A DNA stretch of 64,000 nt from Macrostomum lignano (Eukaryota), in contig NIVC01002735.1 of assembly GCA_002269645.1 (NCBI GenBank), positions 62,001 through 126,000 of the forward strand. The letters run 5' to 3'. The notes below the pieces were generated by a model. The model had not been told where the DNA came from. It saw only the letters and a list, made by a program, of their open reading frames with translations, and ran no database searches. The number at the start of each line of letters is the position of its first letter. The first letter of the stretch is position 1. This document shows, piece by piece, positions 2,491-64,000 of this stretch. Both the position numbers and the translations under genes were made by a program.

Positions 2491-2510
2491 ATGCCAGTCA
2501 ATCCCCTCAC

Positions 2511-3791
2511 CTGCAGCAGGGTGCTCAGCAGGCTGGGCGCGGCCTCATCAAAGGTCCCGCAGGCGTGGGCGAAGTCTAGCAGCAGCTCCCGCAGTCGCAG
2601 CTGCTCGGGCAGGCCGCTCAAGTCGACCTCAGCAGCTTCGGTCAGCACGGAGGCGGCCGCTGCGGACCCGGACGCTGTTGGCGAAGACAGCAGCGCCTGC
2701 GCGCAGTGCCTGGAGTGTTTCAGGCGGCCCAGCTCGGCCTCGGCCTCCAAGTAAACCTGGTAGCGCTGCTCCGTTGAGCTCTCAAACGGGTACAGGCCGA
2801 TCAGCAGCGGCCAGACCTGCCTGCGAACGCTGGAGTCGACGCCCGACAGGTACACCGTCCGCTTGAACTGGGTCGGGTCCTCAACGAAGCCTTCGATGCT
2901 CACCAGGTCTTCAAAGCTCGCCGAGTTCAGCCGGTTCGGCCTGCCGACGCTCTCGGCGTCCCCGTTGCCGCCGGCCTCCTGTCGCTGCTGGCGAATCTCC
3001 CGAGGTGTCACCGCCGCAGCGTCGTTCGCCGCCCGAATAGAATGAAGCGGCTGCTCCAGAATCCGCAGGTGCCGCGGCTGCCGCTGTTGCTGCTGGCGGA
3101 GGGCGTGAAACTCGGCGTAGGGCGAGCGCGGCCGGCGGCGGCAGCGGAACGCGCCGGGCTGTCCCGCCAGCAGGCGCTCGATGGCCTCCGTGCCGCCGCC
3201 GCCGCCGCTTCCGCTGTGGAAGTGGAAGATCTTCAGCTGGGACTCGGGGCTGCGCACGATCACGTGACCGGGGCAGACCAGCACGCAGCCGGAGTGCATC
3301 AGGTTGCACAGGAAGACGCCGGGCGGCGCGGTCGAGCCGGGGATCCGCGGCGGCGCCGACCGGACGGTGGCGTCCGAGGCGTCGGAGGCGGTCGCCACGG
3401 AGGCGGTGGACTCGGCGCTCATCTGCCTGGACAGCTTGACGTTGGGCGTCCATTTGAGCAGGAACTCGGTGTGGCCGGCCGGCCGCACGCGGCTGACGAT
3501 GCACAGGTAGCCCAGGTGGTGCGCCGTGTCCGAGCCGGACGGCTGCTCGATGTGCACACAGACGTTGTTGCGCGAGTAGACGATCTCGCCGTCTAGAAAA
3601 GGCGACTCGGACAGCGAGGCCTGGCCGGCCGAAGGCGCGCCGGTCCAAGCGGGCAGCAGGAGCAGCGCGGCGGCCCGCTGCCGGACAGCGGAGCAGAGGC
3701 TGACCAAGGACTGCTGGTAGTCCGGGACAAGGCCGATGCTCCACCGGCGCCAGACTCCCAGGCCGCCAAGGCCGCTCTCGCTGCTGGTCAT
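2511..3791 (-). CDS. TBC1D16: TBC1D16-like Rab-GAP family protein, exon 1 of 3
   Basis: DGEIVYSRNNVCVH matches the TBC1D16 N-terminal motif. VYLSGVDSSVRRQVWPLLIGLY is the start of the TBC domain. Donor CTGCAG|GTGAGG at 2511/2510, phase 0. Confidence 0.85.
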
Positions 3792-4742
3792 GTCAGCCTG
3801 CTGGATTGGGCTGGGGAGTTCCGGCTGCCGCTGCTGCTGCTCCGACTCAAGCTGCTCAATAGTGTCGCGCTGGAGTGTTGTGCAGCCACTATAGGCTAAG
3901 TTAACATTGCCAAGACTACCTGATTACCTAAGTATTGGTCTGCCTTGGAATCATTTTAAAACAAGATATGCAACTACATTGAATATTTGCCAGTTTGTAA
4001 ACTATAAATCATCAAATTGGCTACAATTCGAGAGCTGGTTTAGTGCTTTAGTGAAAAAATCACAAACTACCAATTAGGTCATAGAATCAATAAGCATTAT
4101 TTTTGTCTTTCAAATAATAAACAACTTTAATAAATCTATTGTTGATCAGCAATAAAATATTATACTCTAGGAGAAATTTGTATATATACAAAATCATTTT
4201 CACATTACAAAGTAAAAATATTTATTAATTTAAAATAAACAAATATGATCCGATAGCAAAAATAGGCTTTAAAGTTGCTATCAAATATGCTAAGGCTAGA
4301 AAACGCAACATAATTATCTTTGTTTACACAATATTAGCAATTATGAAATAAGTCTAAAAGTATACATAGACTAATTTCATTGATATACTTAATAAGTGAT
4401 TCTAATAGGTATAGATAATATAGAGAAATCTATTATAGAAATATAGAATTATAGATATAGAATTAATAAGAGAAATACTAACATACAAACATATATGCAA
4501 TTTTATAATTTAAAGGCAAATGATTTAAAATACTTTTAAAGCTTTTATTTTTAATATTGTTGTCAATATTGAAGTAGGCACTTTTTGAATTATTGCTATT
4601 ACAAAGATAAATATAAATTGTTGTTTTAACTGATAAAATAGTTAGTAATAAAAGTAGTTAATAGTTGATATTTTTGTTCAAACTTTAATATTTGTTTAAA
4701 AGTACCCTTTTTGTTTTAAATATTTGAATTGTTGTTTTAATG

Positions 4743-4961
4743 CAATAGTTCTCTACCTGTGGGTTGCTACCCCCAATGGGATTGCATCACCATTTTCTAG
4801 GGGTTGTAGCACTAAGAAATGTGTGAGTGTAAGTATGTCATACTTAATGATGACATTATATAAATATAAAGCATTATATTAATAATAAAGGGGGTTGCAA
4901 ACATTAAAAAACAATGGAAGTGAATAAATTAGGGTCACCTAAAAAAGGTTGAGAACTGCTG
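4743..4961. mobile_element. hAT-type MITE (~219 bp) with 8-bp TSD TTTTAATG
   Basis: Ends CAATAGTTCTCTACCTGTGGG... and ...AGGTTGAGAACTGCTG resemble CAGYGGTTCTCAACC hAT termini (URR1/SPIN/MER20-like). Identical TTTTAATG at 4735-4742 and 4962-4969. Confidence 0.8.
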
Positions 4962-5183
4962 TTTTAATGATCTACCCTATGCCCTACCTTATTTCCTCTG
5001 TATGGCTATGAAAGAATTTTTGCAATTGGCTCGGTAAGCAATAAGATAAATAATAATAAAAAACATCCCTTATATAAATTATTTTTGAATAAGGCCAATG
5101 GCACTAAAAAGTTTGGATATACATTATTTTGTTATTTTATTATTTTAATTATTTAATTATTATCTATTATTTTGGTTTATTAT

Positions 5184-5779
5184 CATAGTCAGGAAGGTGG
5201 CAGTTTGGTCGGAAAATTCCGGCGCACACAAGCCCTTTTTGGGCACACAACGGCGCACAACGGCGCACAGCGGCGCGCCACAACAGCGCACAGCGGCGCA
5301 CTGGCGCACAGCGGCGCACAACGGCGCACACCAGAGGACACCGGCGCATGGCGGCGCGGCGCGGCGGGCGCCGCGCCACATGCAGCGTTACCCTTGTGGC
5401 GATCCCATGTAACGATGTAAGTCGTTACTTGTTACAGTACACTATTCACTGTTCTGTCTAATGTAACACTGCATTCTACCAAAAAATAAAAAATAAAATA
5501 AAATATTTTCCTTTTCCTTTTTACCTTTGTTTTTGCCATTTGCTTACTTTTTATGTTTGTTTTGTTTTAAAAATTAGAAATTAAATTAAAAATTTTTTAA
5601 ATTTCTATTTTCGGTTTAACGATCTCAATTTCTCAAAAAAAGGTCTTTTATTGTCGCAAGGCAGGTAGTGGCGGGCGCACAACGGCGCACACGAGAGTTT
5701 TTGTGTCGGCGCACGGCGCACAATTTTGGGAGAGGCCAAAATTTGTTCCGGCGCACACTCTGCCACCTTCCTGACTATG
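5184..5779. mobile_element. MITE with perfect 20-bp TIRs, present only in the left arm
   Basis: CATAGTCAGGAAGGTGGCAG (5184-5203) and CTGCCACCTTCCTGACTATG (5760-5779). Subterminal GGCGCACA repeats at both ends, AT-rich core. Absent at the mirror site near 62050. No TSD seen. Confidence 0.85.
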
Positions 5780-7539
5780 GATTAGACAGAAGCCTATATT
5801 TAGATATTAGCTAACTTAAGATACAGTTAATCAAAAATCAAAATAACTAAAATGCTATAAGGTCAATAGAAAATACATAGCAAAAAATATAATGAAGACA
5901 AGATATTGGAATTATACATTAGGTCTATAAGTTGCATGTTAGTTGAATGTATGTATGTGTATTATTTAACAAAAATATTAAAGACTAAAATATGTCTTAA
6001 TGAGTTTTAACAATATAATTAAAGCCAAAGAAATTTGCATGGCTAATTATACAGGCCCTAGTGCTATTTTTTATTTACTTAATAAGTTATTTACAATATT
6101 TACATAAAGTAGGCCTATGGCTTGTAGCAATAATTCATTTTTATTGATAGGGGCCCAGCTTACCAGCTATTTTTAAATTAGACTTGAAAAAGTAAAAATT
6201 TTAGGCCTAGTTAAATATGCTAAAATATGGTTTATTGTTTGTCTAAAAACTTTATCACTGACACTGATTATTATTTTATAGTTGGATTAGATTAGGTAAG
6301 GCCTATTTTTTTATGCTGGCAATCAGTATAACCAATACTATAGTTTAGAATCAATCAGGTTTTTAACCGTTACTTGGCTTTATTAAGGCTATTTGCTGAA
6401 TTTTGTAGACTCTAGACTAAATATGATATTCTAATGAGCATAACTTTTGATCGGCTCGATTTGCACTGCTTTTTAGATGAATTTTATAGACCATATGCAT
6501 GCAAGACGCGACTCGCGAGTGGGAGTAGGCAAGACGCGACGCTAAGCCGTCAGTTGCAGTCTAGGATGACAAAATTTGTTTCATTTCACAGCTGGTGTTG
6601 CAGGATCAAATCTAAAGTAAGCAATTTAGTCACTAATACAGGAAAGTGTTGTGTTGTGTTACGCTCGGGAACGGTAAGGCATGGAAGTCCTCAGTTAAAA
6701 AGGCAATACTTACGTTACTTGCTACCTGCCTACCTAGTAGATCAATATTTGAGTTGATTGATGTTGTCAATGTTAATTTCCATGCTTTTGAGGAAATAAC
6801 AAAAATAGGTTATTTCCTTTGATATTGAATGCTTCGAATGGGAGAAGCGACTCCGACAGTTGCAGCCTGCCTGAGCTTGTCGATCGCGATGTTGATGAGG
6901 ATGAGTAAAGCAGAAGAGCTACAACAACAAAAATGTTAACCCAAGCAAATTCATCTCATATATATTTTATTTAAAGTCTATAGCAATTGGCTACATAAGA
7001 GAATAAGAAAGTTTGCAAAGTAAGAAAAGAATTTGGCTTAAATAATTAAAAATAAATAATTAGGGCACTTTTTTGACAAGGTACACAATTTTGTGAATTT
7101 CCGCTTCATAGCTTTGTTAGTTTTTTGTGCGGTGTTTTCGGCATTTTTTTCACTTCTTGTCAATTTCTGACTGAAAGGGAACTCAGGTGGCAATCAAAGG
7201 CAAGTTGTTCAGACGATTGTAGTTCGGAGCAGTTGGGCTAAGAAGAATAATTTATACGAATAAGACACTAACAAGCTCTAGGAACAATGTGTTATAAAAA
7301 CGTAATAGCAAACTTTTTCCCTAAGCTACATGGCTATCAAGACCCTTTAGCTTAACATTAAAAGGAGAACTGTAGTATATACAATATACAGTATATTGGG
7401 CTGGCCGTAGATATTGTATATACTGTATATACAGTGGTCCTTTCTATACAAAAGCCTAAACCCAAGGATGAAGAAAAAGATCAGGTATAGATATATCTAG
7501 GTGAAACAGGTGTAAAAATTCAGTGGCGTACACGTACAC

Positions 7540-8030
7540 AGTGGAGAAAGGCAGATGAGACGCGGCCCCCGAAATCCCCTGCGTAAATTCAAGCACTTGC
7601 ATTTTAAGTGGCCCGAGGGCTACGGCTTCGGTGACGGCTAAAAGGTCAGCGCCGATTTCTTCAAGGACCTGTTCGCTCGATGGGGACTGCCAGGCGCGAT
7701 CGGGACCGACAACGGGCCTCAGTTCACCAGCTACGCCTTCGAGAGAGTTCTATTTAGCTACTACGGCGTGCAGCATGTGATGTGATGGTAGTCAAACTCG
7801 AGCGTCAGACGCCTCAACCGGATCCTGAAGGAGTCGCTGTAAGGCGCCGAGGAGCCCAATACTCGCGACTGCAGTCTGGTGACTCCGTGCGCGTCCGCAG
7901 GCCACAGACGGCTCTCACAAGCTGGCGACAAGGCTCGGCGAAACTTAACAGATCATCCGGCGTCTGGGCCCGCAGGTCCTGGTTGCTAAACGATGGCACT
8001 CTGACAACCGGGTTTGTGTACCTCGCTTGC
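7540..8030 (+). mobile_element. Degenerate, internally deleted Ty3/gypsy-type LTR retrotransposon integrase relic
   Basis: Fragments KWPE, DLFARWGLPGAIGTDNGPQFTSYAF..YGVQH (integrase core, cf. FGxP..IxSDNGPQF) and LQSGDSVRVR...W (integrase C-terminus), in broken frames. Confidence 0.8.
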
Positions 8031-9077
8031 ACCCCTGTTAGAGTTCTCTCGATCTGATTGGTTGGGGTTTGTCTGCCTGCCAGACAGGCCTAGGCTGGGC
8101 GGAGGTTTGGCTGCTTTCTTAATCACGGCTAGTTACGCTCGTATGTTTATGTGCCCACCGGCCGGGACCTCTAAGCCTCTGTGACTTTCCTATATACGCA
8201 ATCGCTTCTTGCTTCTGCGTTATTGGCCCAATCCAATCCAATTTATTGGTTATATCTATCCGAACCATCTGAATCGCAGCGAAAGCCCAGTTCAACTAGC
8301 CTCTTTTGCGAGATAAATAAGTCATTCCGGCTGTTTTGCTAGAAGAAGCCCTAAATTACACTGCGCGCATCAGAAGGCGCCTTTGAATTTTGAGTAAGTG
8401 TCATTTTGAGTGTCATTTGGTGCACTCACAGCTGCCTTTGGTGTTGGCGTAGGTCACTGTGGGACACGGCAGACATTCTCTGCTGAGCTTTGGTGTCAGC
8501 GTATGTACCCGCTAGAAAAGGCTTGGAAATTTTTCAAAGAAATATTTTTCTGTTTGTATTCATAGAACTTTGCATGGGTCTCGTGAATGTCTGGAAGTAA
8601 ATTTTTCCTGGCGTGAAATTTGTGTGTAAATGCCAGCTCAAAGTATAAAATAAATCTGAGAAGTGGATTATTGCACTCGCGAACGATGCAGAGAAGGCTG
8701 CCACCAGACACGTTCTACTTAACTTAAGCATAAACAACACTAAGTAGTCCGAAGACCAGAATGCTCGAGTAATTCCCGATTGTCTCTGGCTGGCTCCAAT
8801 CCCAAGCGCCAAGAGAGCTGTCCGAAGCGCTTCGAACATTTTTAGAAAGCGGCTTGCAAAGGGTCTCAATAAATAGACTTGCCAGGCCGGGGCCTGAGGG
8901 AAAAAGAACAGGGGTAGAAAACTGGCACTTAGGCAGCCAAAAAGAGAGCAGCCAATCGAACTGACTAAATAACAGAACGGTCGACCACAATTCAACCTGG
9001 GAGGGGGCAGCCAATCATACGCGAGATGGTGTAGAAAGTGTGATGTCAATAGCTAGAGCTTGCTCGCATCTTCCCAG

Positions 9078-9530
9078 GCCTGAACTCTCTTCACGCTCTC
9101 ACTGCTTCTGGTCCTCGGAAGCTGAGGATCCTGATGAAGGCGTGGAACGACTCTGAGCACTGGGCTGAGTACTCCAGCTTCTCCGTGGGTCCCGAGTCCG
9201 ACAACTACCAGCTGAGCGTGTCCGGCTTCTCCGGCAGCGCCGGCATCGGCGACTGCCTCCCCAGAGCAACGGCATGCAGTTCAGCACGAAGGACGCCGAT
9301 CATGACATTATCTCTGGCAACTGTGCAAAAGTGTTTAAAGGTGGCTGGTGATTCAAGAACTGTCACTGCGCCCACCCGAACGGAGAGTACAAAGACTCAT
9401 CTACTGCCATCGGTGGTGCTTATGCTTATGTGCTTATCGGTGGGCTGGGGTCTGTTACGGATGGGTGCAGCACCGGCAGAAGCAGAAGCACCATGATACC
9501 AGTAAGATCTTCCATCTTATCATGGCCCCC
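9078..9530 (+). pseudogene. Fibrinogen-related domain (FReD) C-terminal exon, left copy with 1-bp frameshift near 9260
   Basis: Acceptor TTCCCAG|GC then (G)LNSLHALT...LRI...WAEYSSFSVGPESDNYQLSVSGFSG.AG...NGMQFSTKDADHD...NCA..FKGGWWFKNCHCAHPNGEY. A C-run is one base shorter than in the right copy, possibly a sequencing error. Confidence 0.8.
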
Positions 9531-9650
9531 ATGACTCCCATGACTCCCATGACCCCCCATGACCCCATGACTCCCATGACCCCATGACCTCCATGACTCC
9601 CATGACCCCATGACCCCCATGACTCCCATGACTCCCATGACCCCTATCAT
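9525..9650. repeat. 9-bp repeat CATGACTCC/CATGACCCC (mirror 57665-57925, longer)
   Basis: Visible periodicity right after the FReD exon. Confidence 0.9.
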
Positions 9651-10529
9651 GATCCAATCTCGTAAGTACTGAAATTCTGCTTGTGCTCCCCAGAGGGGGC
9701 TAAATGGCTAGTTCCAAATACTAAAACGGTTTGTCGGTACGCATGCGATCGATTTAAAAAAACGGCTCAACCGATTTTCTTCAAACTTGCACCATTCAAT
9801 CAGAATTTTTACCTGACGGTGCATGTGTCTTGGCTAAGAAATAGCTCAATTCTAAAGGGATTAAGTATTTAAAAAACATGCTTTTTCGCAAAGGTCAAGG
9901 GAACTTGTTAGTTTGATTTACATTGCAATTTGATTTACATTGCGTGACCATATTGGTTATTGTGAGCCATTCTGACTGGAATTGAATAACGATTGCATCA
10001 TAAGGTAGCGCCCACAGTAACTCAATATTCTTTGTCTTCGGCTAGTGAAAATGAAAAATTTATGTGCAAAAAAAGATTGTACATGTACATAAAAACATGT
10101 CCACGTGCACAACCGGCAATTCTGTTACTGTGGTCGTTACTGTCCCCACTCCACAGTCCGATCTAGATATTATACGAGTAATGTTGTAGATGCTGTCAGG
10201 CGTTGGGACTTGTAATAGCTCACGCGGACTCCACTGGTTAAGTAAGTTAGAACTTCTCGAGAAAACTTGAGCGACTGCTAGTTAGCACACGCGCATATAT
10301 ATTTAATAGGCACGACGTACATTAGTACACGATACACGTACACGCAAGGACTAGGAATCAATGAGGTGCATATACTTAAGCAATAATCAACGTGCCCACG
10401 CAACCCTACACCCCCAAGCAACCTCAGATCAGTTCAGTGGCACTTTGCCACATGACTCACTGAGTAAATTTAACTGCGGGAGGCGACGGGACGCACAGAT
10501 TCGGCCTGGCATCCATGTCTCAGCCAGTC

Positions 10530-12670
10530 ACTAGCTGAGACTTGGATTGTTGCACTGGCTGAGACTTGGATTGTTGCACTGGCTGAGACATGGATATTGC
10601 ACTGGCTGATACTTGGATTATTGCACTGGCTGGGACATGGATTATTGCACTTGCTGAGACATGGATTGTTGCACTTGCTGAGACTTGGATTGTTGCACTT
10701 GCTGAGACATGGATTGTTTCACCTGCTGAGACATTGATTATTGCACTGGCTGAGACTTGGATTGTTGCACTGGCTGAGACATGGATTGTTGCACTTGCTG
10801 AGACTTGGATTGTTGCACTGGCTGAGACATGGATTGTTTCACCTGCTGAGACATTGATTATTGCACTGGCTGAGACTTGGATTGTTGCACTTGCTGAGAC
10901 TTGGATTGTTGCACTGGCTGAGACTTGGATTGTTGCACTTGCTGAGACATGGATTGTTGTACTGGCTGAGACATGGATTGTTGCACTGGCTGAGACTTGG
11001 ATTGTTGCACTGGCTGAGACTTGGATTGTTGCACTTGCTGAGACATGGATTGTTGTACTGGCTGAGACTTGGATTGTTGCACTGGCTGAGACATGGATTG
11101 TTGCACTGGCTGAGACTTGGATTGTTGCACTGGCTGAGACATGGATTGTTGCACTGGCTGAGACTTGGATTGTTGCACTGGCTGAGACATGGATTGTTGC
11201 ACTTGCTGAGAGTTGGATTATTGCACTTGCTGAGACTTGGGTTGTTGCACTTGCTGAGACTTGGATTGTTGCACTTGCTGAGACTTGGATTGTTGCACTT
11301 GCTGAGACTTGGATTATTGCACTGGCTGAGACATGGATTATTGCGCTGGCTGAGACATGGATTATTGCACTGACTGAGACATGGATTATGGCGCTGGCTG
11401 AGACATGGATTATTGCACTGGCTGAGACATGGATTATGGCGCTGGCTGAGACATGGATTATTGCGCTGGCTGAGACATGGATTACTGCACTGGCTGAGAT
11501 ATGGATTATTGCACTGGCTGAGATATGGATTATTGCGCTGGCTGAGACATGGATTATTGCACTGGCTGAGATATGGATTATTGCACTGGCTGGGACATGG
11601 ATTGTTGCACTTGCTGAGACATGGATTGTTTCACCTGCTGAGACATTGATTATTGCACTGGCTTAGAAAGGGATTATTGCACTAGCTTAGAAAGGGATTA
11701 TTGCACTAGCTTAGAAAGGGATTATTGCACTAGCTTAGAAAGGGATTATTGCACTAGCTTAGAAAGGGATTATTGCACTAGATTAGAAAGGGATTATTGC
11801 ACTAGCTTAGAAAGGGATTATTGCACTAGATTAGAAAGGGATTATTGCACTAGCTTAGAAAGGTATTATTGCACTAGATTAGAAAGGGATTATTGCACTA
11901 GCTTAGAATGGGATTATTGCACTAGCTTAGAAAGGGATGACTGCACTAGCTTAGAAAGGGATTATTGCACTAGATTAGAAAGGGATTATTGCACTAGCTT
12001 AGAAAGGGATTATTGCACTAGCTTAGAAAGGGATTATTGCACTAGCTTAGAAAGGGATTATTGCACTGGCTTAGAAAGGGATTATTGCACTGGCTTAGAA
12101 AGGGATTATTGCACTAGCTTAGAAACGGATTATTGCAGTAGCTTAGAAAGGGATTATTGCACTAGCTTAGAAAGGGATTATTGCACTAGCTTAGAAAGGG
12201 TTATTGCACTAGCTTAGAAAGGGATTATTGCACTATAGCTTAGAAAGGGATTATTGCACTAGCTTAGAAACGGATTATTGCACTAGCTTAGAAACGGATT
12301 ATTGCACTAGCTTAGAAAGGGATTATTGCACTAGCTTAGAAAGGGATTATTGCACTAGCTTAGAAAGGGATTATTGCACTAGCTTAGAAAGGGATTATTG
12401 CACTAGCTTAGAAACGGATTATTGCACTAGCTTAGAAACGGATTATTGCACTAGCTTAGAAACGGATTATTGCACTAGCTTAGAAACGGATTATTGCACT
12501 AGCTTAGAAACGGATTATTGCACTAGCTTAGAAAGGGATTATTGCACTAGCTTAGAAAGGGATTATTGCACTAGCTTAGAAAGGGATTATTGCACTAGCT
12601 TAGAAAGGGATTATTGCACTAGCTTAGAAAGGGATTATTGCACTAGCTTAGAAAGGGATTATTGCACTGG
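10530..12670. repeat. Compound 24-bp minisatellite: TTGCACTGGCTGAGACTTGGATTG (to ~11664), then TTGCACTAGCTTAGAAAGGGATTA
   Basis: Both units are 24 bp; they give the (ALAETWIV)n and (SLERDYCT)n pseudo-ORFs. Confidence 0.97.
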
Positions 12671-13037
12671 CTGTGAGTAAATGGCAATATGTTTCATTAT
12701 CTCTGAAGAGCTGCTGTTTCCGTGTGTGAAGCTCGAACTGACTTGATCGCAAGTGGCATTTACAGAAATAAAAGATATATTGAAATTGAAACAAAATTTC
12801 AATGTATACGTGTCAGATGAGCAAAGAAGACTTTTAAGTTGGGCATGCCTAGCAAGGCTCCAGGTACTACTAAGTAATTACTAACGAACTCGTTTAAGCA
12901 AGAGCCGTTTGCTGGCGAAATAAGTGTCCAGCCCGAAAGATACACAATCCTTGATTTCATTGATTTCATTGATTAAGTTCGCAGTCTGTGTCAAAGTGAA
13001 TTTTATTCACTTCTCTCAGTAGTTCAGAGCCGACAAT

Positions 13038-13328
13038 ATGCAATACCGATAGCAATGCAATACCGATAGCAATGCAATACCGATAGCAATGCAATACCGA
13101 TAGCAATGCAATACCGATAGCAATGCAATACCGATAGCAATGCAATACCGATAGCAATGCAATACCGATAGCAATGCAATACCGATAGCAATGCAATACC
13201 GATAGCAATGCAATACCGATAGCAATGCAATACCGATAGCAATGCAATACCGATAGCAATGCAATACCGATAGCAATGCAATACCGATAGCAATGCAATA
13301 CCGATAGCAATGCAATACCGATAGCAAT
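13038..13328. repeat. 17-bp minisatellite CAATGCAATACCGATAG (mirror 53820-54588, ~2.6x longer)
   Basis: Near-perfect tandem units. Confidence 0.97.
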
Positions 13329-13551
13329 ACAAAAAGCCAAAAAAATTACAAGGTAACTACAAACGCTGGCTGCACAACAGCAGTGAATTGTCAATGGCAA
13401 TTATAGCAATTTTTTAAGCTACTTTAAAATACTGGAGAAGAAAAGTTAGCTTTATGATGTTGGCTGGGAGTTATATTGATTACATAATCAGTAAAAAGAA
13501 ACAACATGGAAAAAGTGCTTGTGGCAAGAACAGCGAATAAACGAGTTGATA

Positions 13552-13625
13552 GTCAGTCAGTCAGTCAGTCAGTCAGTCAGTCAGTCAGTCAGTCAGTCAG
13601 TCAGTCAGTCAGGCAGTCAGTCAGG
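13552..13625. repeat. (TCAG)n microsatellite overlapping the SKP1 stop (mirror 53341-53573)
   Basis: About 17 units on the left and about 58 on the right. Confidence 0.97.
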
Positions 13626-14168
13626 CAGTGAGTCAGAGCTTTTCTCCTCCGGCGGGTCGTGGCACCAGGCGAGCTCCTGCCTGACCTGCTCCTCCTCCTG
13701 CGGCGTCAGGTCGCACTTGATGTTGAAGGTTTTGCGAATGTCTTCCGGGCCGCGGCCGCGGATCATATCGGCAACGGCCAGACAGCAGGCGTCAACGAGG
13801 CCGCGGACGTCTAGGTAGGCGGCGGCCTGCAGCAGCTCGAACAGGCAGACGGGCTCCAGGTTGAGGAACTCGCTGTCCCACACGCTGAAGACCGCGCCGC
13901 CCCCGCCACTGCCGTAGACGCCGCTAGCGACGCTGCCGAGCTGCAGGCGGTTCTCGTCGTCCTCGGGCGGCGCCGGGTCGTCCCGATGGTGCGCGCACCA
14001 GGTGGCCACGCGACGTAGCGTCGCCGAGGTGACGTTCGGCACGGGGATCTCGTGGCCATCGCCGCCGGGGTAGTCGGCCAGCCGGCGGAGTCGCTCGGAG
14101 AGCCGCAGAGCGTCCGAGTCCAGCTCGATGATCTCATTGTCGCTGCTGAGCAGCTTCACGTTGGGCAT
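13617..14168 (-). CDS. SKP1: SKP1 family protein, intronless (183 aa from MPNVKL)
   Basis: MPNVKLLSSDNEIIE, IPVPNVTSATLRRVATWCAHH, WDSEFL, LFELLQAAAYLDVRGLVDACC..VADMIRG..PEDIRKTFNIKCD.TPQEEEQVR.E..WC are all canonical Skp1 motifs. Confidence 0.93.
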   Translation of the reverse strand: MPNVKLLSSDNEIIELDSDALRLSERLRRLADYPGGDGHEIPVPNVTSATLRRVATWCAHHRDDPAPPEDDENRLQLGSVASGVYGSGGGGAVFSVWDSEFLNLEPVCLFELLQAAAYLDVRGLVDACCLAVADMIRGRGPEDIRKTFNIKCDLTPQEEEQVRQELAWCHDPPEEKSSDSLPD

Positions 14169-16137
14169 GGCGGGGCTGCAACTGAGCCAGTTTGCGGACC
14201 GCATGGTAACAAAAATCCTACTCAATATTTTTAAGTCCAGCTCAATACATACATCAAATGGTTCATCTAGCTCGTAATGCTAAGTCACCATTGTATTTAT
14301 CTCGAATTCATTTTTTTACATGTATCAATAAATCATTGATGATAGTCAATGTGATAAAAACGTAGATGCAAAAAGTCTATTTTTGTTTCAGAAAACTCTG
14401 CAACTCAGGTGGTTTTTTGGATTATTTTTACCCATCATTGGTTCATGGTCCACCCTGTGCAAAATATAAAGCTTTGAAGTCTAAAAGATTTCATAAAAAT
14501 ACAAACTAATTATTATTAATAAATTAGTTAATAAATTATTATTAATAAATGGGTAAAATTGAACACTAATTCAGTAAACAAACAATATCTGTTCAATTTT
14601 GTTTGAAATTCCTTTGTAAAAGTCCAGATAAATTTCCTTTGTAAATAAATAAACAAGTATAAATATAAAATGCATTAGATTTAAGTTTGGCTAACAATTT
14701 AACTGATTAGATTTTTATTGGTTGGTATATTGCCTGTTTGACAGTCCCTAAGAAGATCTCTTCAAATCTCTATTTGTGAGTGAATATTTATCCAGAGTAA
14801 ATTGATAAAGGGAGAAGTATTGAAAACGAGAATATGAGTATATTTTATTATACCAGAGATTCACTCAAATATTTGACAATGAAATATTGTGCCAATGTGG
14901 CTATAATTTTCTGAAAAGAACTCCATTAAATACTGGCATTTTAGTTAAAATCAAAACTTCTTGCAATCTCGCTAGTCACTGAAACACTGATCACTTAGCT
15001 TAGACTTTCTCGTTTTAAGGATTTTTCGGCCTTTCCGAGTGTTTCAGTCCGGTCCATCGTTTTAAGCATTGTTGCAAATATATGTATCATCCTTAAATAG
15101 AATAAAAATCAAACCAATAGAATCAATGTGTAGTGGATCATGCTTCTGTCTTGTATAAATTATATTATTTTAATTCTTTGCTCTATTCACGAGTTTTAGA
15201 TAGCTAATTTTAGTATATGGGTTATGACACGTGGTGTTAAAAGTTATGAATTTTATACGTTAAAATAGCTGTTTGGTATCCATGGTATTTAAGTGCGCAG
15301 CTTTAAACAAATCAGCATTGGTGTATATTATTCATTATTAAAGATAAATAATATTCTTTATCTATTCTTTGGTTGAGGATACTAATATTATTACAGATAA
15401 AATTTATGATATTAAAACTAAGAAAAGAAATCTAACATTCTGGTGTATGCGCGCACATTTACGTCTAGAAGTGAGTAATGTGGACTAATGTGAGTAGTTG
15501 GGACGATTTTACGCTCGTATGTGATCTCGGAGTCAAGCAAAAAGGGGAATAAGAGTTCTGTAATTAAAGAACATTAGCATTGAGGATCAAGTTTTAGATA
15601 AAGTTATGCAATAAGTACTTATAGCTGATTCTACTACATGTATAAACGTGCAATATACATTAACAGTTTGTCTGTCACTGAACTACTTGACTATAAATTA
15701 AGTACAGATAATATAGGCATTACCAGGTCAGATGTAAGAAATTTTCGATTACTGAATGATTTTTAGTCTAATTAAATAGTAAAAACCAGGTTCCGTGAGA
15801 TCCCGAATTCCTGCAACAATTACACTGTACATGTACATGTAGGACCATGATTTGTTGAGCATGATTCCAGTAAATCCGCAGTAACAGTACATAGCTATGC
15901 ACGCGTGCAAACAGGGAAATGACAGTAGGTAAATATAGTGGGTTAAAGGTGAGAAATACAGTGTTTCTTGGTTCGATAGATGCATTGTTTCTCAATGCAT
16001 GGCCGTGATAAAAGTAGCTTTACATTTACATTGTAAATGTACATGCACAAGCAAGTACGCTGTACAATATACATATAGTAGGTCTTACGGTACTCTTTGT
16101 CGAAAACAATGCTGTACGGTCCAGTACTTTTACGAAA

Positions 16138-16745
16138 CTAAACAAAGAATTCTCGTTTTATCGTCTGCTGAGCATGCTGATGAGACCCTGCAGGTCGACG
16201 ACCGCTGCGCCACCTTTGCGACACTGCCGCTGCAGCTCCGGCGTCGTCCGACGCAGCCACGCAGTCCACACTCTCCTGCCGCACCAACAGGAAGCTCGCA
16301 GCCGCTGTTGTGCTGGACGCTTCCCTTGCTGACAGTCCGCATCGCCAGTTCGACACGACCAGGTCCTCCGTGCAGGGAATCAGCAGAGTTGAGGACGCCT
16401 GCCGCAGGATCGGTTCGGTCGGCGCTTCCAATGCGGCTTCGCAGTCGCTGCAATCAAGACTGCTCCCGCCGGTTCTCCTTGGACAGCAGCAGCGGCAGCA
16501 CTGACTGCGGACACCGGCGTCAGATTCTTCGTCATCGTCACTGTCGCTTCGTCGAGTCTGAATAACGGCCTTCAGCACGCAGACAGTGAACAATAAGCTG
16601 GCCAGGACCGACACGGCCACGGCTGTGGAGATCACTGCGATACGAGCTGACGGGGCCACACCGGCTGATGACAGCTTCGTTGGCGGAGGGCCGTCGTCGC
16701 CAAGAGTTCAGGCGGGAATGACATAGACGAAGATGCTACATTCAA
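16138..16745 (-). CDS. Mirror copy of the single-pass membrane protein ORF (1-bp deletion near 16686)
   Basis: Reverse complement of 50214-50822; ORF 16138..16659 intact downstream of the indel. Confidence 0.45.
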
Positions 16746-28218: not shown

Positions 28219-28559
28219 CTGAGAAAAGGATGGAATAAAAGAACAAGTTAATGAGCCGGTAACTCTACTTAGAGTAGTAACTGATTTGTCTAATTTCAAT
28301 GAGTGGCTTCCATGGATTTGAAAAAAAACTGATTTTTGCTAACGCCTAACGTTTTGTCCGCCAATGATCCTCGAGCAGGGCGTTTAATCGAAAATCGATT
28401 GAAATTTCACGTTACAGAAACGAACAGTTTTTTTGTTTAAAACGAATTTTATGCTTATTTTCTTGAAAAAGCTATAGAAAAAAAGAGTGCAAATGCCTGT
28501 TTAAGATGATGCAATGCATACACGCTGTGAATTCTATTTGCGATTTGGCGAGCACTCAC

Positions 28560-28840: not shown

Positions 28841-29027
28841 CTGCAACGGAATTTGATCGATTAACAGGCAAATGTATTTGCTTGCTGACTGGCTGGTTGG
28901 TGATTTGATGACTTTCTAAATAAAAAGTTGATCCAGAAAAGTTCACATCACTCGACGGAGTGAATGATCACTGAAGTAAACTAATAATTGATCTTTTGTT
29001 TCAGCAATCGTCTCTAATCGCACTCAC

Positions 29028-35410: not shown

Positions 35411-35457
35411 CTGACCTTCAAGGAACCGAATTAGCTAAAACAAAGGCAAGCCCTCAC

Positions 35458-37965: not shown

Positions 37966-37974
37966 GTGAGAGGC

Positions 37975-50822: not shown

Positions 50823-52796
50823 TTTCGTAAAAGTACTGGACCGTACAGCATTGTTTTCGACAAGGAGTACCGTACTACCTACTATATGTATATTGTACAG
50901 CGTACTTGCTTGTGCATGTACATTTGCAATGTAAATGTAAAGCTACTTTTATCACGGCCATGCATTGAGAAACAATGCATCTACCGAACCAAGAAACACT
51001 GTATTTCTCACCTTTAACCCACTATATTTACCCACTGTCATTTCCCTGTTTGCATGCGTGCATAGCTATGTACAGTTACTGCGGATTTACTGGAATCATG
51101 CTCAACAAATCATGGTCCTACATGTACATGTACAGTGTAATTGTTGCAGGAATTCGGGATCTCACGGAACCTGGTTTTTACTATTTAATTAGACTAAAAA
51201 TCATTCAGTAATCGAAAATTTCTTACATCTGACCTGGTAATGCCTATATTATCTGTACTTAATTTATAGTCAAGTAGTTCAGTGACAGACAAACTGTAAA
51301 TGTATATTGCACGTTTATACATGTAGTAGAATCAGCTATAAGTACTTATTGCATAACTTTATCTAAAACTTGATCCTCAATGCTAATGTTCTTTAATTAC
51401 AGAACTCTTATTCCCCTTTTTGCTTGACTCCGAGATCACATACGAGCGTAAAATCGTCCCAACTACTCACATTAGTCCACATTACTCACTTCTAGACGTA
51501 AATGTGCGCGCATACACCAGAATGTTAGATTTCTTTTCTTAGTTTTAATATCATAAATTTTATCTGTAATAATATTAATATCCTCAACCAAAGAATAGAT
51601 AAAGAATATTATTTATCTTTAATAATGAATAATATACACCAATGCTGATTTGTTTAAAGCTGCGCACTTAAATACCATGGATACCAAACAGCTATTTTAA
51701 CGTATAAAATTCATAACTTTTAACACCACGTGTCGTAACCCATATACTAAAATTAGCTATCTAAAACTCGTGAATAGAGCAAAGAATTAAAATAATATAA
51801 TTTATACAAGACAGAAGCATGATCCACTACACATTGATTCTATTGGTTTGATTTTTATTCTATTTAAGGATGATACATATATTTGCAACAATGCTTAAAA
51901 CGATGGACCGGACTGAAACACTCGGAAAGGCCGAAAAATCCTTAAAACGAGAAAGTCTAAGCTAAGTGATCAGTGTTTCAGTGACTAGCGAGATTGCAAG
52001 AAGTTTTGATTTTAACTAAAATGCCAGTATTTAATGGAGTTCTTTTCAGAAAATTATAGCCACATTGGCACAATATTTCATTGTCAAATATTTGAGTGAA
52101 TCTCTGGTATAATAAAATATACTCATATTCTCGTTTTCAATACTTCTCCCTTTATCAATTTACTCTGGATAAATATTCACTCACAAATAGAGATTTGTAG
52201 AGATCTTCTTAGGGACTGTCAAACAGGCAATATACCAACCAATAAAAATCTAATCAGATAAATTGTTAGCCAAACTTAAATCTAATGCATTTCATATTTA
52301 TACTTGTTTATTTATTTACAAAGGAAATTTATCTGGACTTTTACAACGGAATTTCAAACAAAATTGAACAGATATTGTTCTTTTACTGAATTAGTGTTCA
52401 ATTTTACCCATTTATTAATAATAATTTATTAACTAATTTATTAATAATGATTAGTTTGTATTTTGATGAAGTCTTTTATAAAATTACAATCATCCAAGCT
52501 AACAAGCTTTATATTTTGCACAGGGTGGACCGCTTATTACATATGAACCAATGATGGGTAAAAATAATCCAAATAACCACCTGAGTTGCAGAGTTTTCTG
52601 AAACGAAAATAGACTTTTTGCATCTACGTTTTTATCACATTGACTATCATTAATGATTTGCATGTAGAAAAATGAATTCGAGATAAAGACAATGGTAGAC
52701 TAACCATTTGATGCATGTATTGAGCTGGACTTAAAAATATTGAGTAGGATTTTTGTTACCATGCGGTCCGCAAACTGGCTCAGTTGCAGCCCCGCC

Positions 52797-53348
52797 ATGC
52801 CCAACGTAAAGCTGCTCAGCAGCGACAATGAGATCATCGAGCTGGACTCGGACGCTCTGCGGCTCTCCGAGCGACTCCGCCGGCTGGCCGACTACCCCGG
52901 CGGCGACGGCCACGAGATCCCCGTGCCGAACGTCACCTCGGCGACGCTACGTCGCGTGGCCACCTGGTGCGCGCACCATCGGGACGACCCGGCGCCGCCC
53001 GAGGACGACGAGAACCGCCTGCAGCTCGGCAGCGTCGCTAGCGGCGTCTACGGCGGTGGCAGGGGCGGCGCGGTCTTCAGCGTGTGGGACAGCGAGTTCC
53101 TCAACCTGGAGCCCGTCTGCCTGTTCGAGCTGCTGCAGGCCGCCGCCTACCTGGACGTCCGCGGCCTCGTTGACGCCTGCTGTCTGGCCGTTGCCGATAT
53201 GATCCGCGGCCGCGGCCCGGAAGACATTCGCAAAACCTTCAACATCAAGTGCGACCTGACGCCGCAGGAGGAGGAGCAGGTCAGGCAGGAGCTCGCCTGG
53301 TGCCACGACCCGCCGGAGGAGAAAAGCTCTGACTCACTGCCTGACTGA
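52797..53348 (+). CDS. SKP1: SKP1 family protein, second copy
   Basis: Mirror of 13617-14168, with GCCATG start. Two amino-acid differences seen in the Gly-rich loop (GSGGG vs GGGRG). Confidence 0.93.
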   Translation: MPNVKLLSSDNEIIELDSDALRLSERLRRLADYPGGDGHEIPVPNVTSATLRRVATWCAHHRDDPAPPEDDENRLQLGSVASGVYGGGRGGAVFSVWDSEFLNLEPVCLFELLQAAAYLDVRGLVDACCLAVADMIRGRGPEDIRKTFNIKCDLTPQEEEQVRQELAWCHDPPEEKSSDSLPD

Positions 53349-61213: not shown

Positions 61214-61594
61214 TTTTATTACTATCTATTAGAGGCTGGGGGGTTGTGTGCACCATGGTGCACTTTAAGCGACATAGGCACACAACTGGTGAGAGGCATT
61301 ACTGCCCATTCCGCCGACTCCCCTGAGTAGGCATACAAGTGTGCGGATATATACACAGGCACACACTCACACAGGAGTATACAGCGGCCCTAACTTTATT
61401 TTATTGTTAGGTATGTACACTTCATTGTGCCTTGGGAGGTTGGCTCTCAATGCCATTAATTGCATGAGCAGAGCCAAGCTGAGATTCCGATTCAGCCCCA
61501 AATTAATGTGACTGCACTTGGAATCGAGCCTAGGTTACTAGCACCCCAGAGCCTGCGCTAGACTACTGGGCTACAGCCTCCCTAACAATAGGCC
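61214..61594 (-). mobile_element. tRNA-derived SINE, present only in the right arm
   Basis: Minus-strand head has A box TAGCCCAGTAGT and B box GGCTCGATTCC about 43 nt apart, and an A-rich tail. TAAACCAT is duplicated at 61206-61213 and 61595-61602. The left arm has the empty site near 6225. Confidence 0.75.
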
Positions 61595-62230
61595 TAAACC
61601 ATATTTTAGCATCTTTAACTAGGCCTAAAATTTTTACTTTTTTAAGTCTAATTTAAAAATAGCTAGGCCCCTATCAATAAAAATGAATTAGGCCCCTATT
61701 GCTACAAGCCATACTTTAGGTTTTCATGGTATTTTTTAAGTAAATAAAAATAGTGCTAGGGCCTATATAATTAGCCATGCAAAATTTCTTTAATTATATT
61801 GTTAAAACTCATTAAGACATATTCTAGTCTTTAACATTTTTATTAAATAATATATATACATTCAACTAATATGCAACTTATAGACCTAATGTATAATTCC
61901 AATATCTTGTCTTCGTTATACTTTTTGCTATGAATTTTCTATTGACCTTATAGCATTTTAGTTATTTTGATCAACTATATCTAAAGTTAGCTATGAGATA
62001 AAATATAAAATATATATGAATACATTTAGGCCTATGTATAACAGGAATAATAAACCAAAAGAATATTTTGTATATCCAAATTTTTCAGTGGTATTGGCCT
62101 TATTCAAAATTAATATTTTTAGGGGATATTTTTTACTATTATTTATCTCATTGCTTACTGTGCCAATTGGAAAAATTCTTTCATAGAAATGTAGAGGAAA
62201 TAAGGTAGGGTATAGGGTAGATCATTAAAA

Positions 62231-62445
62231 TAGTGGTTCTCAACCTTTTTTTAGGTGACCATAATTTATTCACTTGCATTGTTTTTTAATGTTTGCAACC
62301 CCCTTTATAAATCAATATAATGCTTTATATTGATATAATTTCATCATTAAATATGACATACTCATACATTTCTTAGTGCTGCAACCCCTAGAAAATGGTG
62401 ATGCAACCCCACTAGGGGTCACAACCCGCAGGTTGAAAACTGCTG
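62231..62445. mobile_element. Mirror copy of the hAT MITE, TSD CATTAAAA
   Basis: TAGTGGTTCTCAACC...AGGTTGAAAACTGCTG flanked by CATTAAAA on both sides. Confidence 0.8.
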
Positions 62446-63370
62446 CATTAAAACAACAATTCAAATGTTTAAAACAAAAAGGGTAGGCCTACCTTTTCAA
62501 ACAAATATTATTAGTTTGAACAAAAATATTTTATCAGTTAAAACAACAATTTATATTTATCTTTGTAATAGCAATAATTCATAAAGTGCCTACTTCAGTA
62601 TTGACAACAAAATTAAAAATTAAAGCTTTAAAAGTATTTTAAATAATTTGCCTTTTAATTATAAAATTGCATGTATATTTGTATGTTTAGTATTTCTCTT
62701 ATTAATTCTATGTCTATAATTCTATATTTCTATAATAGATTTCTCTATATTATCTAAACCTATTAGAATCACTAAGTATATCAATGAAATTAGTCTATGT
62801 ATACTTTAAGACTTATTTCATAAGTGCTAATATTGTGTAAACAAAGATAATGTTGCATTATCTAGCCTTAGCATATTTGATATCAACTTTAAAGTCTATT
62901 TTTGCTATCAGATCATATTTGTTTATTTTAAATTAATAAATATATTTACTTTGTAGTGTCAAAATGATTTTGTATATACACAAATTTCTCCTAAAGTATA
63001 ATATTTTATTGCTGATCAACAATAGATTTATAAAAGTTTGTTTATTATTTGAAAGAAAAAAATAATGCTTATTAATTCTATGACCTTTTTTGGTTGTTTG
63101 TGATTTTGTCACTAAAGCACTAAACCAGTTCTCGAATTGTGCCAATTTGATGATTTATAGTTTACAAACTGGCAAATATTCAATGTAGTTGCATATCTCG
63201 TTTGAAAATGATTTCAAGACAGACCTATACTTAGGCAATTAGGTAGTCTTGGCAATGTTAAATTAGCCTATAGTGGCTGCACAACACTCCAGCGCGACAC
63301 TATTGAGCAGCTTGAGTTGCAGCAGCAGCAGCGGCAGCCGGAACTCCCCAGCCCAGGCCAGCAGGCTGAC

Positions 63371-64000
63371 ATGACCAGCAGCGAGAGCGGCCTTGGCGGC
63401 CTGGGAGTCTGGCGCCGGTGGAGCATCGGCCTTGTCCCGGACTACCAGCAGTCCTTGGCCAGCCTCTGCTCCGCTGTCCGGCAGCGGGCCGCCGCGCTGC
63501 TCCTGCTGCCCGCTTGGACTGGCGCGCCTTCGGCCGGCCAGGCCTCGCTGTCCGAGTCGCCTTTTCTAGACGGCGAGATCGTCTACTCGCACAACAACGT
63601 CTGTGTGCACATCGAGCAGCCGTCCGGCTCGGACACGGCGCACCACCTGGGCTACCTGTGCATCGTCAGCCGCGTGCGGCCGGCCGGCCACACCGAGTTC
63701 CTGCTCAAATGGACGCCCAACGTCAAGCTGTCCAGGCAGATGAGCGCCGAGTCCACCGCCTCCGTGGCGACCGCCTCCGACGCCTCGGACGCCACCGTCC
63801 GGTCGGCGCCGCCGCGGATCCCCGGCTCGGCCGCGCCGCCCGGCGTCTTCCTGTGCAACCTGATGCACTCCGGCTGCGTGCTGGTCTGCCCCGGTCACGT
63901 GATCGTGCGCAGCCCCGAGTCCCAGCTGAAGATCTTCCACTTCCACAGCGGAAGCGGCGGCGGCGGCGGCACGGAGGCCATCGAGCGCCTGCTGGCCGGA
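63371..64000 (+). CDS. TBC1D16: TBC1D16-like protein, second copy, 5' part of exon 1 (truncated by window end)
   Basis: ATGACCAGCAGCGAG at 63371. About 99% identical to the reverse complement of 3162-3791. Confidence 0.85.
   Translation, partial: MTSSESGLGGLGVWRRWSIGLVPDYQQSLASLCSAVRQRAAALLLLPAWTGAPSAGQASLSESPFLDGEIVYSHNNVCVHIEQPSGSDTAHHLGYLCIVSRVRPAGHTEFLLKWTPNVKLSRQMSAESTASVATASDASDATVRSAPPRIPGSAAPPGVFLCNLMHSGCVLVCPGHVIVRSPESQLKIFHFHSGSGGGGGTEAIERLLAG

What the first reader, a model, noticed from the sequence alone, without database searches (positions are those of the whole stretch)
3162..64000. Window is one giant inverted duplication (arms at least 27-30 kb) around a 4-kb spacer
Seen: all genes, TEs and arrays from ~3.2-33.4 kb recur reverse-complemented from 37.4 kb to the window end. 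The arms are not identical: they differ by arm-specific TE insertions, array lengths and many SNPs, so they are two distinct sequences and not a read fold-back. Inference: either a real palindrome holding head-to-head paralogues, or two haplotypes/homeologs scaffolded in opposite orientation across the N gap. The gap sitting exactly at the junction makes the assembly explanation a serious alternative.
Basis: partly seen in the sequence, partly recalled or inferred. Interest (0 to 1): 0.75.

Follow-up and report, generated by a model that had tools for sequence, protein, structure and literature searches.

The report
Two subgenome copies scaffolded head-to-head
The giant "palindrome" is really in the sequence, but it is most likely two of the three known subgenome copies of one flatworm (Macrostomum lignano) locus joined in opposite orientation across an assembly gap, not a true chromosomal structure.

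Summary
The inverted homology is real. Window 3162-33378 matches the reverse complement of 37373-64000, gene for gene and array for array, with arm-specific insertions and different array lengths.

The window is Macrostomum lignano draft assembly Mlig_3_7, scaffold NIVC01002735.1, bases 62001-126000. That assembly was built from Canu contigs joined by SSPACE mate-pair scaffolding. It is published as mostly three diverged copies of every locus (subgenomes S, L1, L2; about 2.2% SNPs) and as highly chimeric.

- **Divergence:** the arms differ by 2.21% in substitutions, the published inter-subgenome rate.
- **Copy number:** the Skp1-like gene has exactly three database relatives above 65% identity. 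They are the two arms and one copy on scaffold NIVC01002154.1.
- **Third copy:** it is collinear. It has no substitutions against the left arm over about 10 kb, then none against the right arm beyond a 20-mer array.
- **Gap:** right-arm homology runs to the first base after the N gap and stops 25 bp into a minisatellite. The left contig ends inside another minisatellite. The "4-kb spacer" is therefore not established.

Only mate-pair scaffolding supports the junction.

Verdict: probably a scaffolding juxtaposition of homeologous or haplotypic copies (about 0.75). A real palindrome is not excluded (about 0.15). Interest is low.

The parts
3162..33378 (+). Left arm (copy A), part of the left contig of scaffold NIVC01002735.1
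   Evidence: Inverted chain. L001 maps 100% to window 3617-24162, which fixes window = record 62001-126000.
33379..36577 (+). Left-contig-only segment (the 'spacer'). It holds the rest of the (ACAGGCACAGACA)n array to 33784, a 30-mer array at 34617-35406, and a 17-mer array at 35993-36577 that runs into the gap.
   Evidence: It has no other match in the window or in L002 on either strand.
36578..37372 (.). Scaffolding gap of 795 N. The length is an estimate, presumably SSPACE's own from mate-pair insert sizes (inferred, not stated in the paper).
   Evidence: One search shows it is the only N run. Assembly method from PMC5730564.
37373..64000 (-). Right arm (copy B), the start of the right contig, cut by the window end. 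Its inner end stops 25 bp into the minisatellite.
   Evidence: L003 maps 100% to window 42914-63496.
17522..23041 (+). 20-mer minisatellite, 275 copies in A. The counterpart at 48259-49436 has 59 copies in B, and copy C has 99. The third copy changes allegiance from A to B across this array.
48259..49436 (-). Right-arm counterpart of the 20-mer minisatellite
13617..14204 (-). Skp1-like gene, copy A (annotated product P0001, 181 aa)
   Evidence: Pfam Skp1 and Skp1_POZ.
52761..53348 (+). Skp1-like gene, copy B (annotated product P0121). It shares 194/196 aa with copy A.
2484..3791 (-). First long exon of a TBC/RabGAP-like gene, copy A. Its outer part lies left of the arm boundary that the window end imposes.
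   Evidence: The Pfam PH_RBD match is below threshold. The best relative is an M. lignano Rab-GAP TBC protein at 37% identity.
63371..64000 (+). The same TBC-like exon, copy B, cut by the window end. It shares 207/210 aa with copy A.
27295..28215 (-). GC-rich 306-aa ORF of unknown function, copy A. Copy B at 42538-43458 encodes an identical protein (920/921 nt).
   Evidence: No family or homolog was found.
5184..5779 (+). Left-arm-specific 596-bp MITE-like element with perfect 20-bp terminal inverted repeats. It is absent from B and C.
61218..61594 (+). Right-arm-specific insertion of about 389 bp, flanked by the 12-bp direct repeat TAAACCAT(T/A)TTT. It is absent from A and C.

Best explanation
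The two arms are two of the three diverged copies (subgenomes S, L1 and L2) that the Macrostomum lignano DV1 genome carries for nearly every locus. Canu assembled them as separate contigs. The right-arm contig (B) broke at a minisatellite about 6 kb into a patch where it is nearly identical to the left-arm contig (A). Contig A ran 3.2 kb further and broke in another minisatellite. SSPACE then joined the two contig ends tail to tail with an estimated 795-bp gap. This produced an apparent palindrome of at least 30 kb that does not exist as such on a chromosome.

Shown here: the organism and assembly; the arm homology and where it ends; the divergence; the copy count; and the mosaic relation to a third scaffold.

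Inferred: that the join is wrong, and how it arose. Possible causes are a small inversion of the 33.4-36.6 kb segment in one haplotype, so that this shared segment links to arm A in one haplotype and to arm B in the other; a mate-pair library used with the wrong orientation; or repeat-driven spurious links.
For: 1. Source. The Skp1 gene products place the window on GCA_002269645.1 (Mlig_3_7) scaffold NIVC01002735.1, bases 62001-126000. Mlig_3_7 is Canu contigs plus SSPACE v3 scaffolding with Illumina and 454 paired-end and mate-pair data (PMC5730564).

2. Published background (PMC10733133).
- 69.6% of Mlig_3_7 lies in 3-copy paralogous blocks.
- The inter-copy SNP rate is 2.2% genome-wide and 1.1% in coding sequence, with large indel differences.

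3. Divergence. Arm-to-arm substitution divergence is 2.21%, or 514/23,303. Coding parts differ by 0-0.9% at the nucleotide level. Both match the published inter-copy values.

4. Copy number. The whole protein database holds only three proteins above 65% identity to the Skp1-like product. They are copy A, copy B, and copy C on another scaffold, NIVC01002154.1. That is three copies for three subgenomes. Scaffold C has over 100 kb on the junction side, and no second Skp1 copy is recorded on it.

5. Third copy.
- C is collinear with both arms.
- Over A 6.2-17.5 kb outside arrays, C has 0 substitutions against A, and only homopolymer 1-bp indels and array-length differences. B differs there by 0.4-6% per 1-kb window.
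- On the other side of the 20-mer array, at 23.0-24.0 kb, C has 0 differences against B, while A differs at 38 of 966 sites.
Patchwise identity of this kind is what alleles or homeologs of one locus show. So A and B behave as alternative versions of one locus.

6. Gap edges. Both are contig breaks inside tandem arrays, and right-arm homology is truncated by the gap.

7. Identity near the junction. The arms are nearly identical (0.26%) over the last 6.5 kb before contig B ends. This is as expected for a haplotig running about one read length into a region collapsed with the other copy.

8. General precedent. [quoted passage not shown]
Against: - No reads, depth or mate-pair data could be examined, so the join is not directly disproved.
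- Simple mis-mapping between collinear haplotypes gives pairs that imply overlap, not inversion (my reasoning). SSPACE therefore presumably had same-strand-type links, and these need some explanation.
- The left-only segment has no inverted copy in the window that could cause spurious links.
- Arm identity rises towards the junction: about 5% divergence in the outer part, 2-3% in the middle and 0.26% in the inner part. A real palindrome with centre-biased gene conversion could also look like this.
- The copy count rests on one annotated gene. The other genes here are unannotated.
- I could not read scaffold C at the position equivalent to the junction.
Confidence: 0.75

Rival explanations
1. 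A real inverted duplication (palindrome) on one M. lignano chromosome. The arms would be at least 30 kb around a spacer of about 3-4 kb. The gap would merely hide the right arm's copy of the minisatellite and the rest of the 17-mer array. Arm-to-arm gene conversion, strongest near the centre, would keep the inner 6.5 kb almost identical.
For: - The scaffolder placed the ends about 0.8 kb apart in this orientation (gap of 795 N; method).
- The missing roughly 400 bp of array plus the array remainder would fit a gap of about 800 bp.
- Divergence falls monotonically towards the junction, from about 5% to 2-3% to 0.26%.
- Both arms keep intact genes.
- Inverted repeats also break assemblies near their centre, so a gap there is not decisive.
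Against: - Overall arm divergence equals the ordinary inter-subgenome divergence (PMC10733133).
- Only three copies of the marker gene exist, not four or six.
- Copy C has no substitutions against A in one patch and none against B in the next, in collinear order. For a palindrome on another chromosome this would need extra exchange events.
- In the outer and middle parts A is closer to C than to B. The duplication would therefore predate the A-C split, yet no second Skp1 copy is recorded on scaffold C.
- Known large palindromes have arms more than 99.9% identical (my knowledge of primate sex-chromosome palindromes).
Confidence: 0.15
2. A partly real junction. One subgenome copy (the B haplotype) carries a local inversion of the 33.4-36.6 kb segment relative to the A haplotype. 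Mate pairs then truly link arm B to the far end of that segment. The segment was assembled only once, inside contig A. The scaffold therefore merges two haplotypes around a shared, oppositely oriented segment, and neither haplotype has a palindrome. This is a specific mechanism within the mis-scaffolding explanation.
For: - It explains how inverted-orientation links could arise between otherwise collinear copies (inference).
- Contig B breaks exactly at the boundary of the segment, and contig A breaks at its other end.
- Inversions between M. lignano subgenomes are reported and are proposed to maintain L1/L2 heterozygosity (PMC10733133).
Against: There is no direct evidence. The segment has no second copy in the data available. 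Scaffold C could not be read at this position.
Confidence: 0.2
3. A fold-back (missed-adapter) long read or another single-molecule artefact created the mirror image.
For: Inverted symmetry about a point close to a contig end.
Against: The arms differ by 514 substitutions, by private transposon insertions and by kilobase-scale array-length differences. The junction is a scaffolding gap, not read sequence. The left side also has 3.2 kb with no mirror copy.
Confidence: 0.01

Closest known systems
Three-copy paralogous blocks (subgenomes S, L1, L2) and chimeric scaffolds of the Mlig_3_7 assembly (Zadesenets et al. 2023, PMC10733133)
   Same: Same assembly. There are three collinear copies of the locus (arm A, arm B, scaffold NIVC01002154.1). 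Substitution divergence is 2.21%, against the published 2.2%. Coding divergence is 1% or less, against the published 1.1%. Large differences come from indels, transposons and arrays. Two copies end up mixed in one scaffold.
   Different: Here two copies sit in the same scaffold in inverted orientation across a gap. The paper reports S/L chimerism in general, not head-to-head joins. I could not determine which arm is S, L1 or L2.
False heterotype duplications in genome assemblies (Ko et al. 2022, PMC9516828)
   Same: Two diverged versions of one locus both retained in a 'haploid' assembly and placed next to each other on one scaffold, separated by an assembly gap.
   Different: Those cases were described for diploid vertebrates. 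Here the copies are subgenomes or fixed heterozygous chromosome variants of a neopolyploid, and the copies are inverted. The depth and discordant-pair criteria could not be tested.
Large genomic palindromes with gene-conversion-homogenised arms (for example primate X/Y ampliconic palindromes)
   Same: Kilobase-scale inverted arms holding intact head-to-head gene copies around a short non-duplicated spacer. Identity is highest next to the spacer.
   Different: Arm identity here is 97.8% overall (substitutions only) with many indels, against more than 99.9% in those palindromes (from my own knowledge). Physical contiguity is unproven. The copy number does not exceed the number of subgenomes.

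Membership tests
Genuine large palindrome / inverted segmental duplication | Two long arms that are reverse complements of each other | tested here: met
   Collinear inverted chain 3162-33378 <-> 64000-37373.
Genuine large palindrome / inverted segmental duplication | Both arms lie on one DNA molecule, joined through a sequenced centre or spacer | not testable with these tools
   The junction is a 795-N scaffolding gap. Both gap edges are contig breaks inside unrelated tandem arrays. No reads are available.
Genuine large palindrome / inverted segmental duplication | The arms are extra copies, so copy number exceeds what ploidy or subgenomes give | tested here: not met
   Exactly three Skp1-like copies above 65% identity exist in the database: two arms plus one on another scaffold. 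The genome has three subgenomes (PMC10733133). This rests on one annotated gene.
Genuine large palindrome / inverted segmental duplication | The arms are closer to each other than to homologous copies elsewhere (duplication younger than the subgenome split, or homogenised) | tested here: not met
   Over A 6.2-17.5 kb, A has no substitutions against the third copy C, while B differs by 0.4-6% per 1-kb window. At 23.0-24.0 kb, B has no differences against C, while A differs at 38 of 966 sites. A and B are the closest pair only from about 27 kb inward (0.26% over 26.8-33.4 kb), where C is not available.
False heterotype duplication / homeolog mis-scaffolding | The duplicated pair is separated by an assembly gap on the same scaffold | tested here: met
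   Gap at 36578-37372, with right-arm homology starting at 37373. Criterion from PMC9516828.
False heterotype duplication / homeolog mis-scaffolding | Divergence between the copies equals the haplotype or subgenome divergence of that genome | tested here: met
   2.21% against the published 2.2% overall, 1.91% for L1-L2 and 2.41% for L-S.
False heterotype duplication / homeolog mis-scaffolding | Each copy has single-haplotype (single-subgenome) read depth and copy-specific k-mers | not testable with these tools
   No read data are accessible.
False heterotype duplication / homeolog mis-scaffolding | Discordant or absent read or pair support across the join | not testable with these tools
   No read data are accessible. 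SSPACE must have had some links, and their nature is unknown.
Mlig_3_7 three-copy paralogous block (S/L1/L2) | Three collinear copies of the same segment in the assembly, about 2% SNPs, and large indel and repeat differences | tested here: met
   A, B and C align collinearly over the 23.5 kb available for C. Array lengths differ in all three.

The most novel reading that the evidence does not exclude
The join is correct. The DV1 line of M. lignano would then carry a true palindrome of at least 30 kb (possibly about 45 kb) whose arms range from about 95% identity at the outside to 99.7% next to the spacer. This could be a homeologous segment captured head-to-head during the rearrangements that built or diversified the large chromosome, and it would now be undergoing centre-outward gene conversion.
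Probability: 0.15. Interest if true: 0.5.

Novelty: not a real feature. Interest (0 to 1): 0.12.

Why it matters
If taken at face value, the scaffold would suggest head-to-head paralogous gene pairs (Skp1-like, TBC/RabGAP-like and others) and a giant palindrome in a regeneration model organism. The evidence says these are most likely the ordinary subgenome copies of a neopolyploid, mis-placed by scaffolding.

The practical value is a warning for users of Mlig_3_7. Gene copy numbers, 'paralogue' pairs and inverted structures next to N gaps in this assembly should not be interpreted without read-level checks.

The locus also shows how patchy the identity between the three copies is: kilobase patches with zero substitutions alternate with patches of 2-6% divergence. 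That bears on recombination or conversion between subgenomes, or on haplotype switching inside contigs.

Tried and rejected
1. Walking along the two scaffolds to see the structure beyond the window, and the third copy at the junction-equivalent position. This failed because only the Skp1-like gene is annotated here.
- The exact look-up of the 306-aa ORF found nothing.
- The homolog search with the TBC-like exon found only a 37% paralogue at another locus.
- A search with concatenated inner-region ORFs found nothing.
- All three homolog searches are now used.

2. Looking for inverted copies of the left-only segment (33379-36577) that could cause spurious mate-pair links. None exist in the window or in L002.

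3. Pfam on nine further ORFs gave only a fibrinogen-C fragment and nothing informative for the junction.

4. Rfam and tRNA scans found nothing.

5. The supplement of PMC10733133 is only about 11,000 characters, so I did not open it. I judged it too short to hold a per-scaffold S/L classification.

6. The fold-back-read explanation was rejected because of the arm differences.

7. My first BLAST-based estimates of A-C and B-C divergence were inflated by misaligned arrays. The MAFFT site-pattern counts replaced them.
Full report
**1. Observation**

The window has a single N run, 36578-37372, 795 bases. A minus-strand self-comparison gives one collinear chain of inverted matches:
- 3162-5144 with 64000-62046
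- 5808-6234 with 61993-61595
- 6221-13332 with 61218-54295
- 13038-18740 with 54113-48270
- 24195-33378 with 46532-37373

Every gene-like ORF and every tandem array of the left arm recurs in mirror order on the right.

The arms are not identical.
- There are 514 substitutions in 23,303 gap-free aligned columns, or 2.21%.
- A 596-bp element with perfect 20-bp terminal inverted repeats (5184-5779) is private to the left arm.
- An insertion of about 389 bp (61218-61594), flanked by a 12-bp direct repeat, is private to the right arm.
- Every minisatellite differs in length. The 20-mer array, for example, is 5520 vs 1178 bp.

**2. The gap, tested first**

Read on the minus strand, the right contig ends '...GTGCACAAGCACAGGCACAGGCACAGAGA|NNN'. 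This corresponds to left-arm 33350-33378, about 25 bp into the minisatellite that runs 33352-33784 in the left arm. The left contig ends in the middle of an unrelated 17-mer array, 35993-36577.

Three things follow.
- The two flanks are different tandem arrays, so nothing can be said about continuity or frame.
- The ORFs drawn across the gap are artefacts of translating N.
- The right arm's inner boundary is imposed by the contig end.

The '4-kb spacer' is therefore 3199 bases that the left contig has and the right contig did not reach, plus an estimated gap. It is not a demonstrated unique centre. This segment has no other copy in the window or in the third scaffold fragment.

**3. Where the window comes from**

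The Skp1-like ORF (Pfam Skp1 and Skp1_POZ) has an identical database protein. That protein is encoded on GCA_002269645.1, scaffold NIVC01002735.1, 144,678 bp. The fetched loci map 100% to window 3617-24162 and 42914-63496. This fixes the window as record 62001-126000.

GCA_002269645.1 is Macrostomum lignano Mlig_3_7. PacBio reads were assembled with Canu, polished with Pilon, and scaffolded by SSPACE v3 with Illumina and 454 paired-end and mate-pair data. There are 5980 contigs in 5270 scaffolds (PMC5730564). The N gap is thus presumably an SSPACE join, and the junction has no sequence support of its own.

**4. What is known about this assembly (PMC10733133)**

- 69.6% of Mlig_3_7 lies in three-copy paralogous blocks. 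After correction by read depth the authors conclude that the DV1 genome consists of three paralogous elements.
- These elements are S (the small chromosomes) and L1 and L2 (two differing variants of the large chromosome).
- The SNP rate between copies is 2.2% overall and 1.1% in coding sequence. It is 1.91% for L1-L2 and 2.41% for L-S.
- Differences reach about 36% when indel lengths are counted.
[quoted passage not shown] L1/L2 chimerism could not be assessed.

**5. The arms behave as two of those three copies**

(a) Their divergence, 2.21%, is the published inter-copy value. The coding parts differ by at most 0.9% at the nucleotide level: Skp1 583/588 nt, TBC exon 625/630 nt, ORF306 920/921 nt.

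(b) In a database of 5.8 billion proteins, only three are more than 65% identical to the Skp1-like product. These are the left-arm copy, the right-arm copy, and one on scaffold NIVC01002154.1.

(c) That third copy (C; 20.5 kb available as L002) is collinear with both arms. The table gives site patterns in gap-free MAFFT columns.

| Left-arm interval | Pattern |
|---|---|
| 3.2-6.1 kb | All three copies differ. |
| 6.2-17.5 kb | C has 0 substitutions against A outside arrays. B differs by 0.4-6% per 1-kb window. |
| 23.0-24.0 kb | C has 0 differences against B. A differs at 38 of 966 sites. |
| 25.0-26.8 kb | All three differ slightly, with A the most distinct. |
| 26.8-33.4 kb | A and B differ by 0.26%. 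C is not available here. |

Over 6.2-17.5 kb, the remaining A-C differences are six 1-bp indels, five of them clearly homopolymer-length differences, one 23-bp indel next to a (CAGT)n microsatellite, and array-length changes. The switch of C from A-like to B-like lies across the 20-mer array. All three copies differ in array lengths.

A single collinear sequence matches one arm and then the other. This is what alleles or homeologs of one locus look like, whether through recombination or conversion between them or through haplotype switching inside contigs. It is not what a homeolog of a palindrome would look like.

(d) In the outer and middle parts A is closer to C than to B. If A and B were a true duplication, it would be older than the A-C split. 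Scaffold C has more than 100 kb on the junction side, yet no second Skp1 copy is recorded on it.

**6. Most likely mechanism (inferred)**

Contig B is the separately assembled version of one subgenome copy. It runs about 6.5 kb into a patch where it is nearly identical to contig A and stops at a minisatellite. That is the behaviour expected of a haplotig entering a collapsed region. Contig A carries the collapsed continuation and stops in the next large array. SSPACE then joined the two ends.

I cannot show why it did so in inverted orientation. By my own reasoning, simple cross-mapping between collinear copies implies overlap, not inversion.

Possible causes are:
- a local inversion of the 33.4-36.6 kb segment in the B haplotype (inversions between these subgenomes are reported)
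- a library used with the wrong orientation
- repeat-driven links

In vertebrate assemblies, false duplications are characteristically separated by an assembly gap (PMC9516828).

**7. The rival that remains**

A real palindrome would also give a gap near its centre, and about 800 bp could hold the missing array sequence. The rise in identity towards the junction (about 5%, then 2-3%, then 0.26%) could reflect centre-biased conversion.

Against it stand the copy count, the ordinary inter-subgenome divergence, and the mosaic identity of the third copy. Comparable kilobase patches with no substitutions also occur between A and C and between B and C. The near-identity next to the junction is therefore not special to the A-B pair.

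I put the real palindrome at about 0.15 and mis-scaffolding (all mechanisms) at about 0.75. The remainder covers other mixtures of contig-level chimerism.

**8. Gene content, for the record**

- A TBC/RabGAP-like gene: 2484-3791 on the minus strand, with its copy at 63371 onward. Its best relative is an M. lignano TBC protein at 37% identity.
- A fibrinogen-C fragment: 9134-9496, with its copy at 57917-58306.
- The Skp1-like gene, in both arms.
- A small putative membrane-protein ORF: 50235-50822. The left copy has a 1-bp shorter G run at 16684 than both B and C, which would shift the frame.
- GC-rich ORFs of unknown function at 27.3-29.4 kb and 32.7-33.1 kb. No family or homolog was found for them.

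There are no Rfam or tRNA hits.

**9. Verdict**

The biological palindrome is probably not real. The underlying biology, three diverged subgenome copies, is already published. Interest is low. The checks that would settle it need read-level data and are listed under next steps.

Noticed in passing
window 1078-57930 (17 arrays; largest 17522-23041): Minisatellite arrays with periods of 9-45 bp, plus one (CTGA)n microsatellite, make up about 20.1 kb, or 32% of the sequenced window. That is roughly twice the 15% simple/tandem repeat share reported for the genome. Several arrays are strongly strand-asymmetric (GC skew down to -0.76 at 18-22 kb). Every array differs in length among the three copies of the locus.
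   Followed up: partly
window 6162-17521 vs L002; window 23042-24041 vs L002: The third scaffold copy has zero substitutions against the left arm over about 10 kb. It then has zero against the right arm on the other side of the 20-mer array. This means either real exchange between subgenome copies or a haplotype switch inside a Canu contig at the array.
   Followed up: partly
window 16684 (also 7612, 9003, 9258, 17198): Five of the six 1-bp differences between otherwise substitution-free copies A and C are clear homopolymer-length differences, typical of residual long-read errors. The one at 16684 shortens a G run in copy A relative to both B and C. It would shift the frame of the small membrane-protein ORF that is intact in the right arm (50235-50822).
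   Followed up: partly
window 5184-5779: A 596-bp non-autonomous element with perfect 20-bp terminal inverted repeats (CATAGTCAGGAAGGTGGCAG) and an internal GC-rich 10-bp repeat. It is present only in copy A, so it was inserted, or is polymorphic, after the copies diverged.
   Followed up: partly
window 9134-9496 (+) and 57917-58306 (-): A short ORF matching only the C-terminal part of the fibrinogen C domain (Pfam E = 3.7e-6). It is probably an exon or a gene fragment and is conserved in both arms.
   Followed up: no
window 601-3900, 13601-14200, 27251-29450 and mirror positions: Coding islands are about 68-70% GC, set in intergenic DNA that drops to about 31-40% GC. GC content alone therefore marks likely exons. 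Most of these islands have no annotated gene in the public record (only Skp1 is called within the 20-kb loci).
   Followed up: no
L003 10001-10583 (window 52914-53496): The annotated right-arm Skp1 product (P0121, 144 aa) does not equal the simple translation of its gene range. It is also shorter than the intact 195-aa ORF present there, so the public gene model for this copy looks wrong.
   Followed up: no
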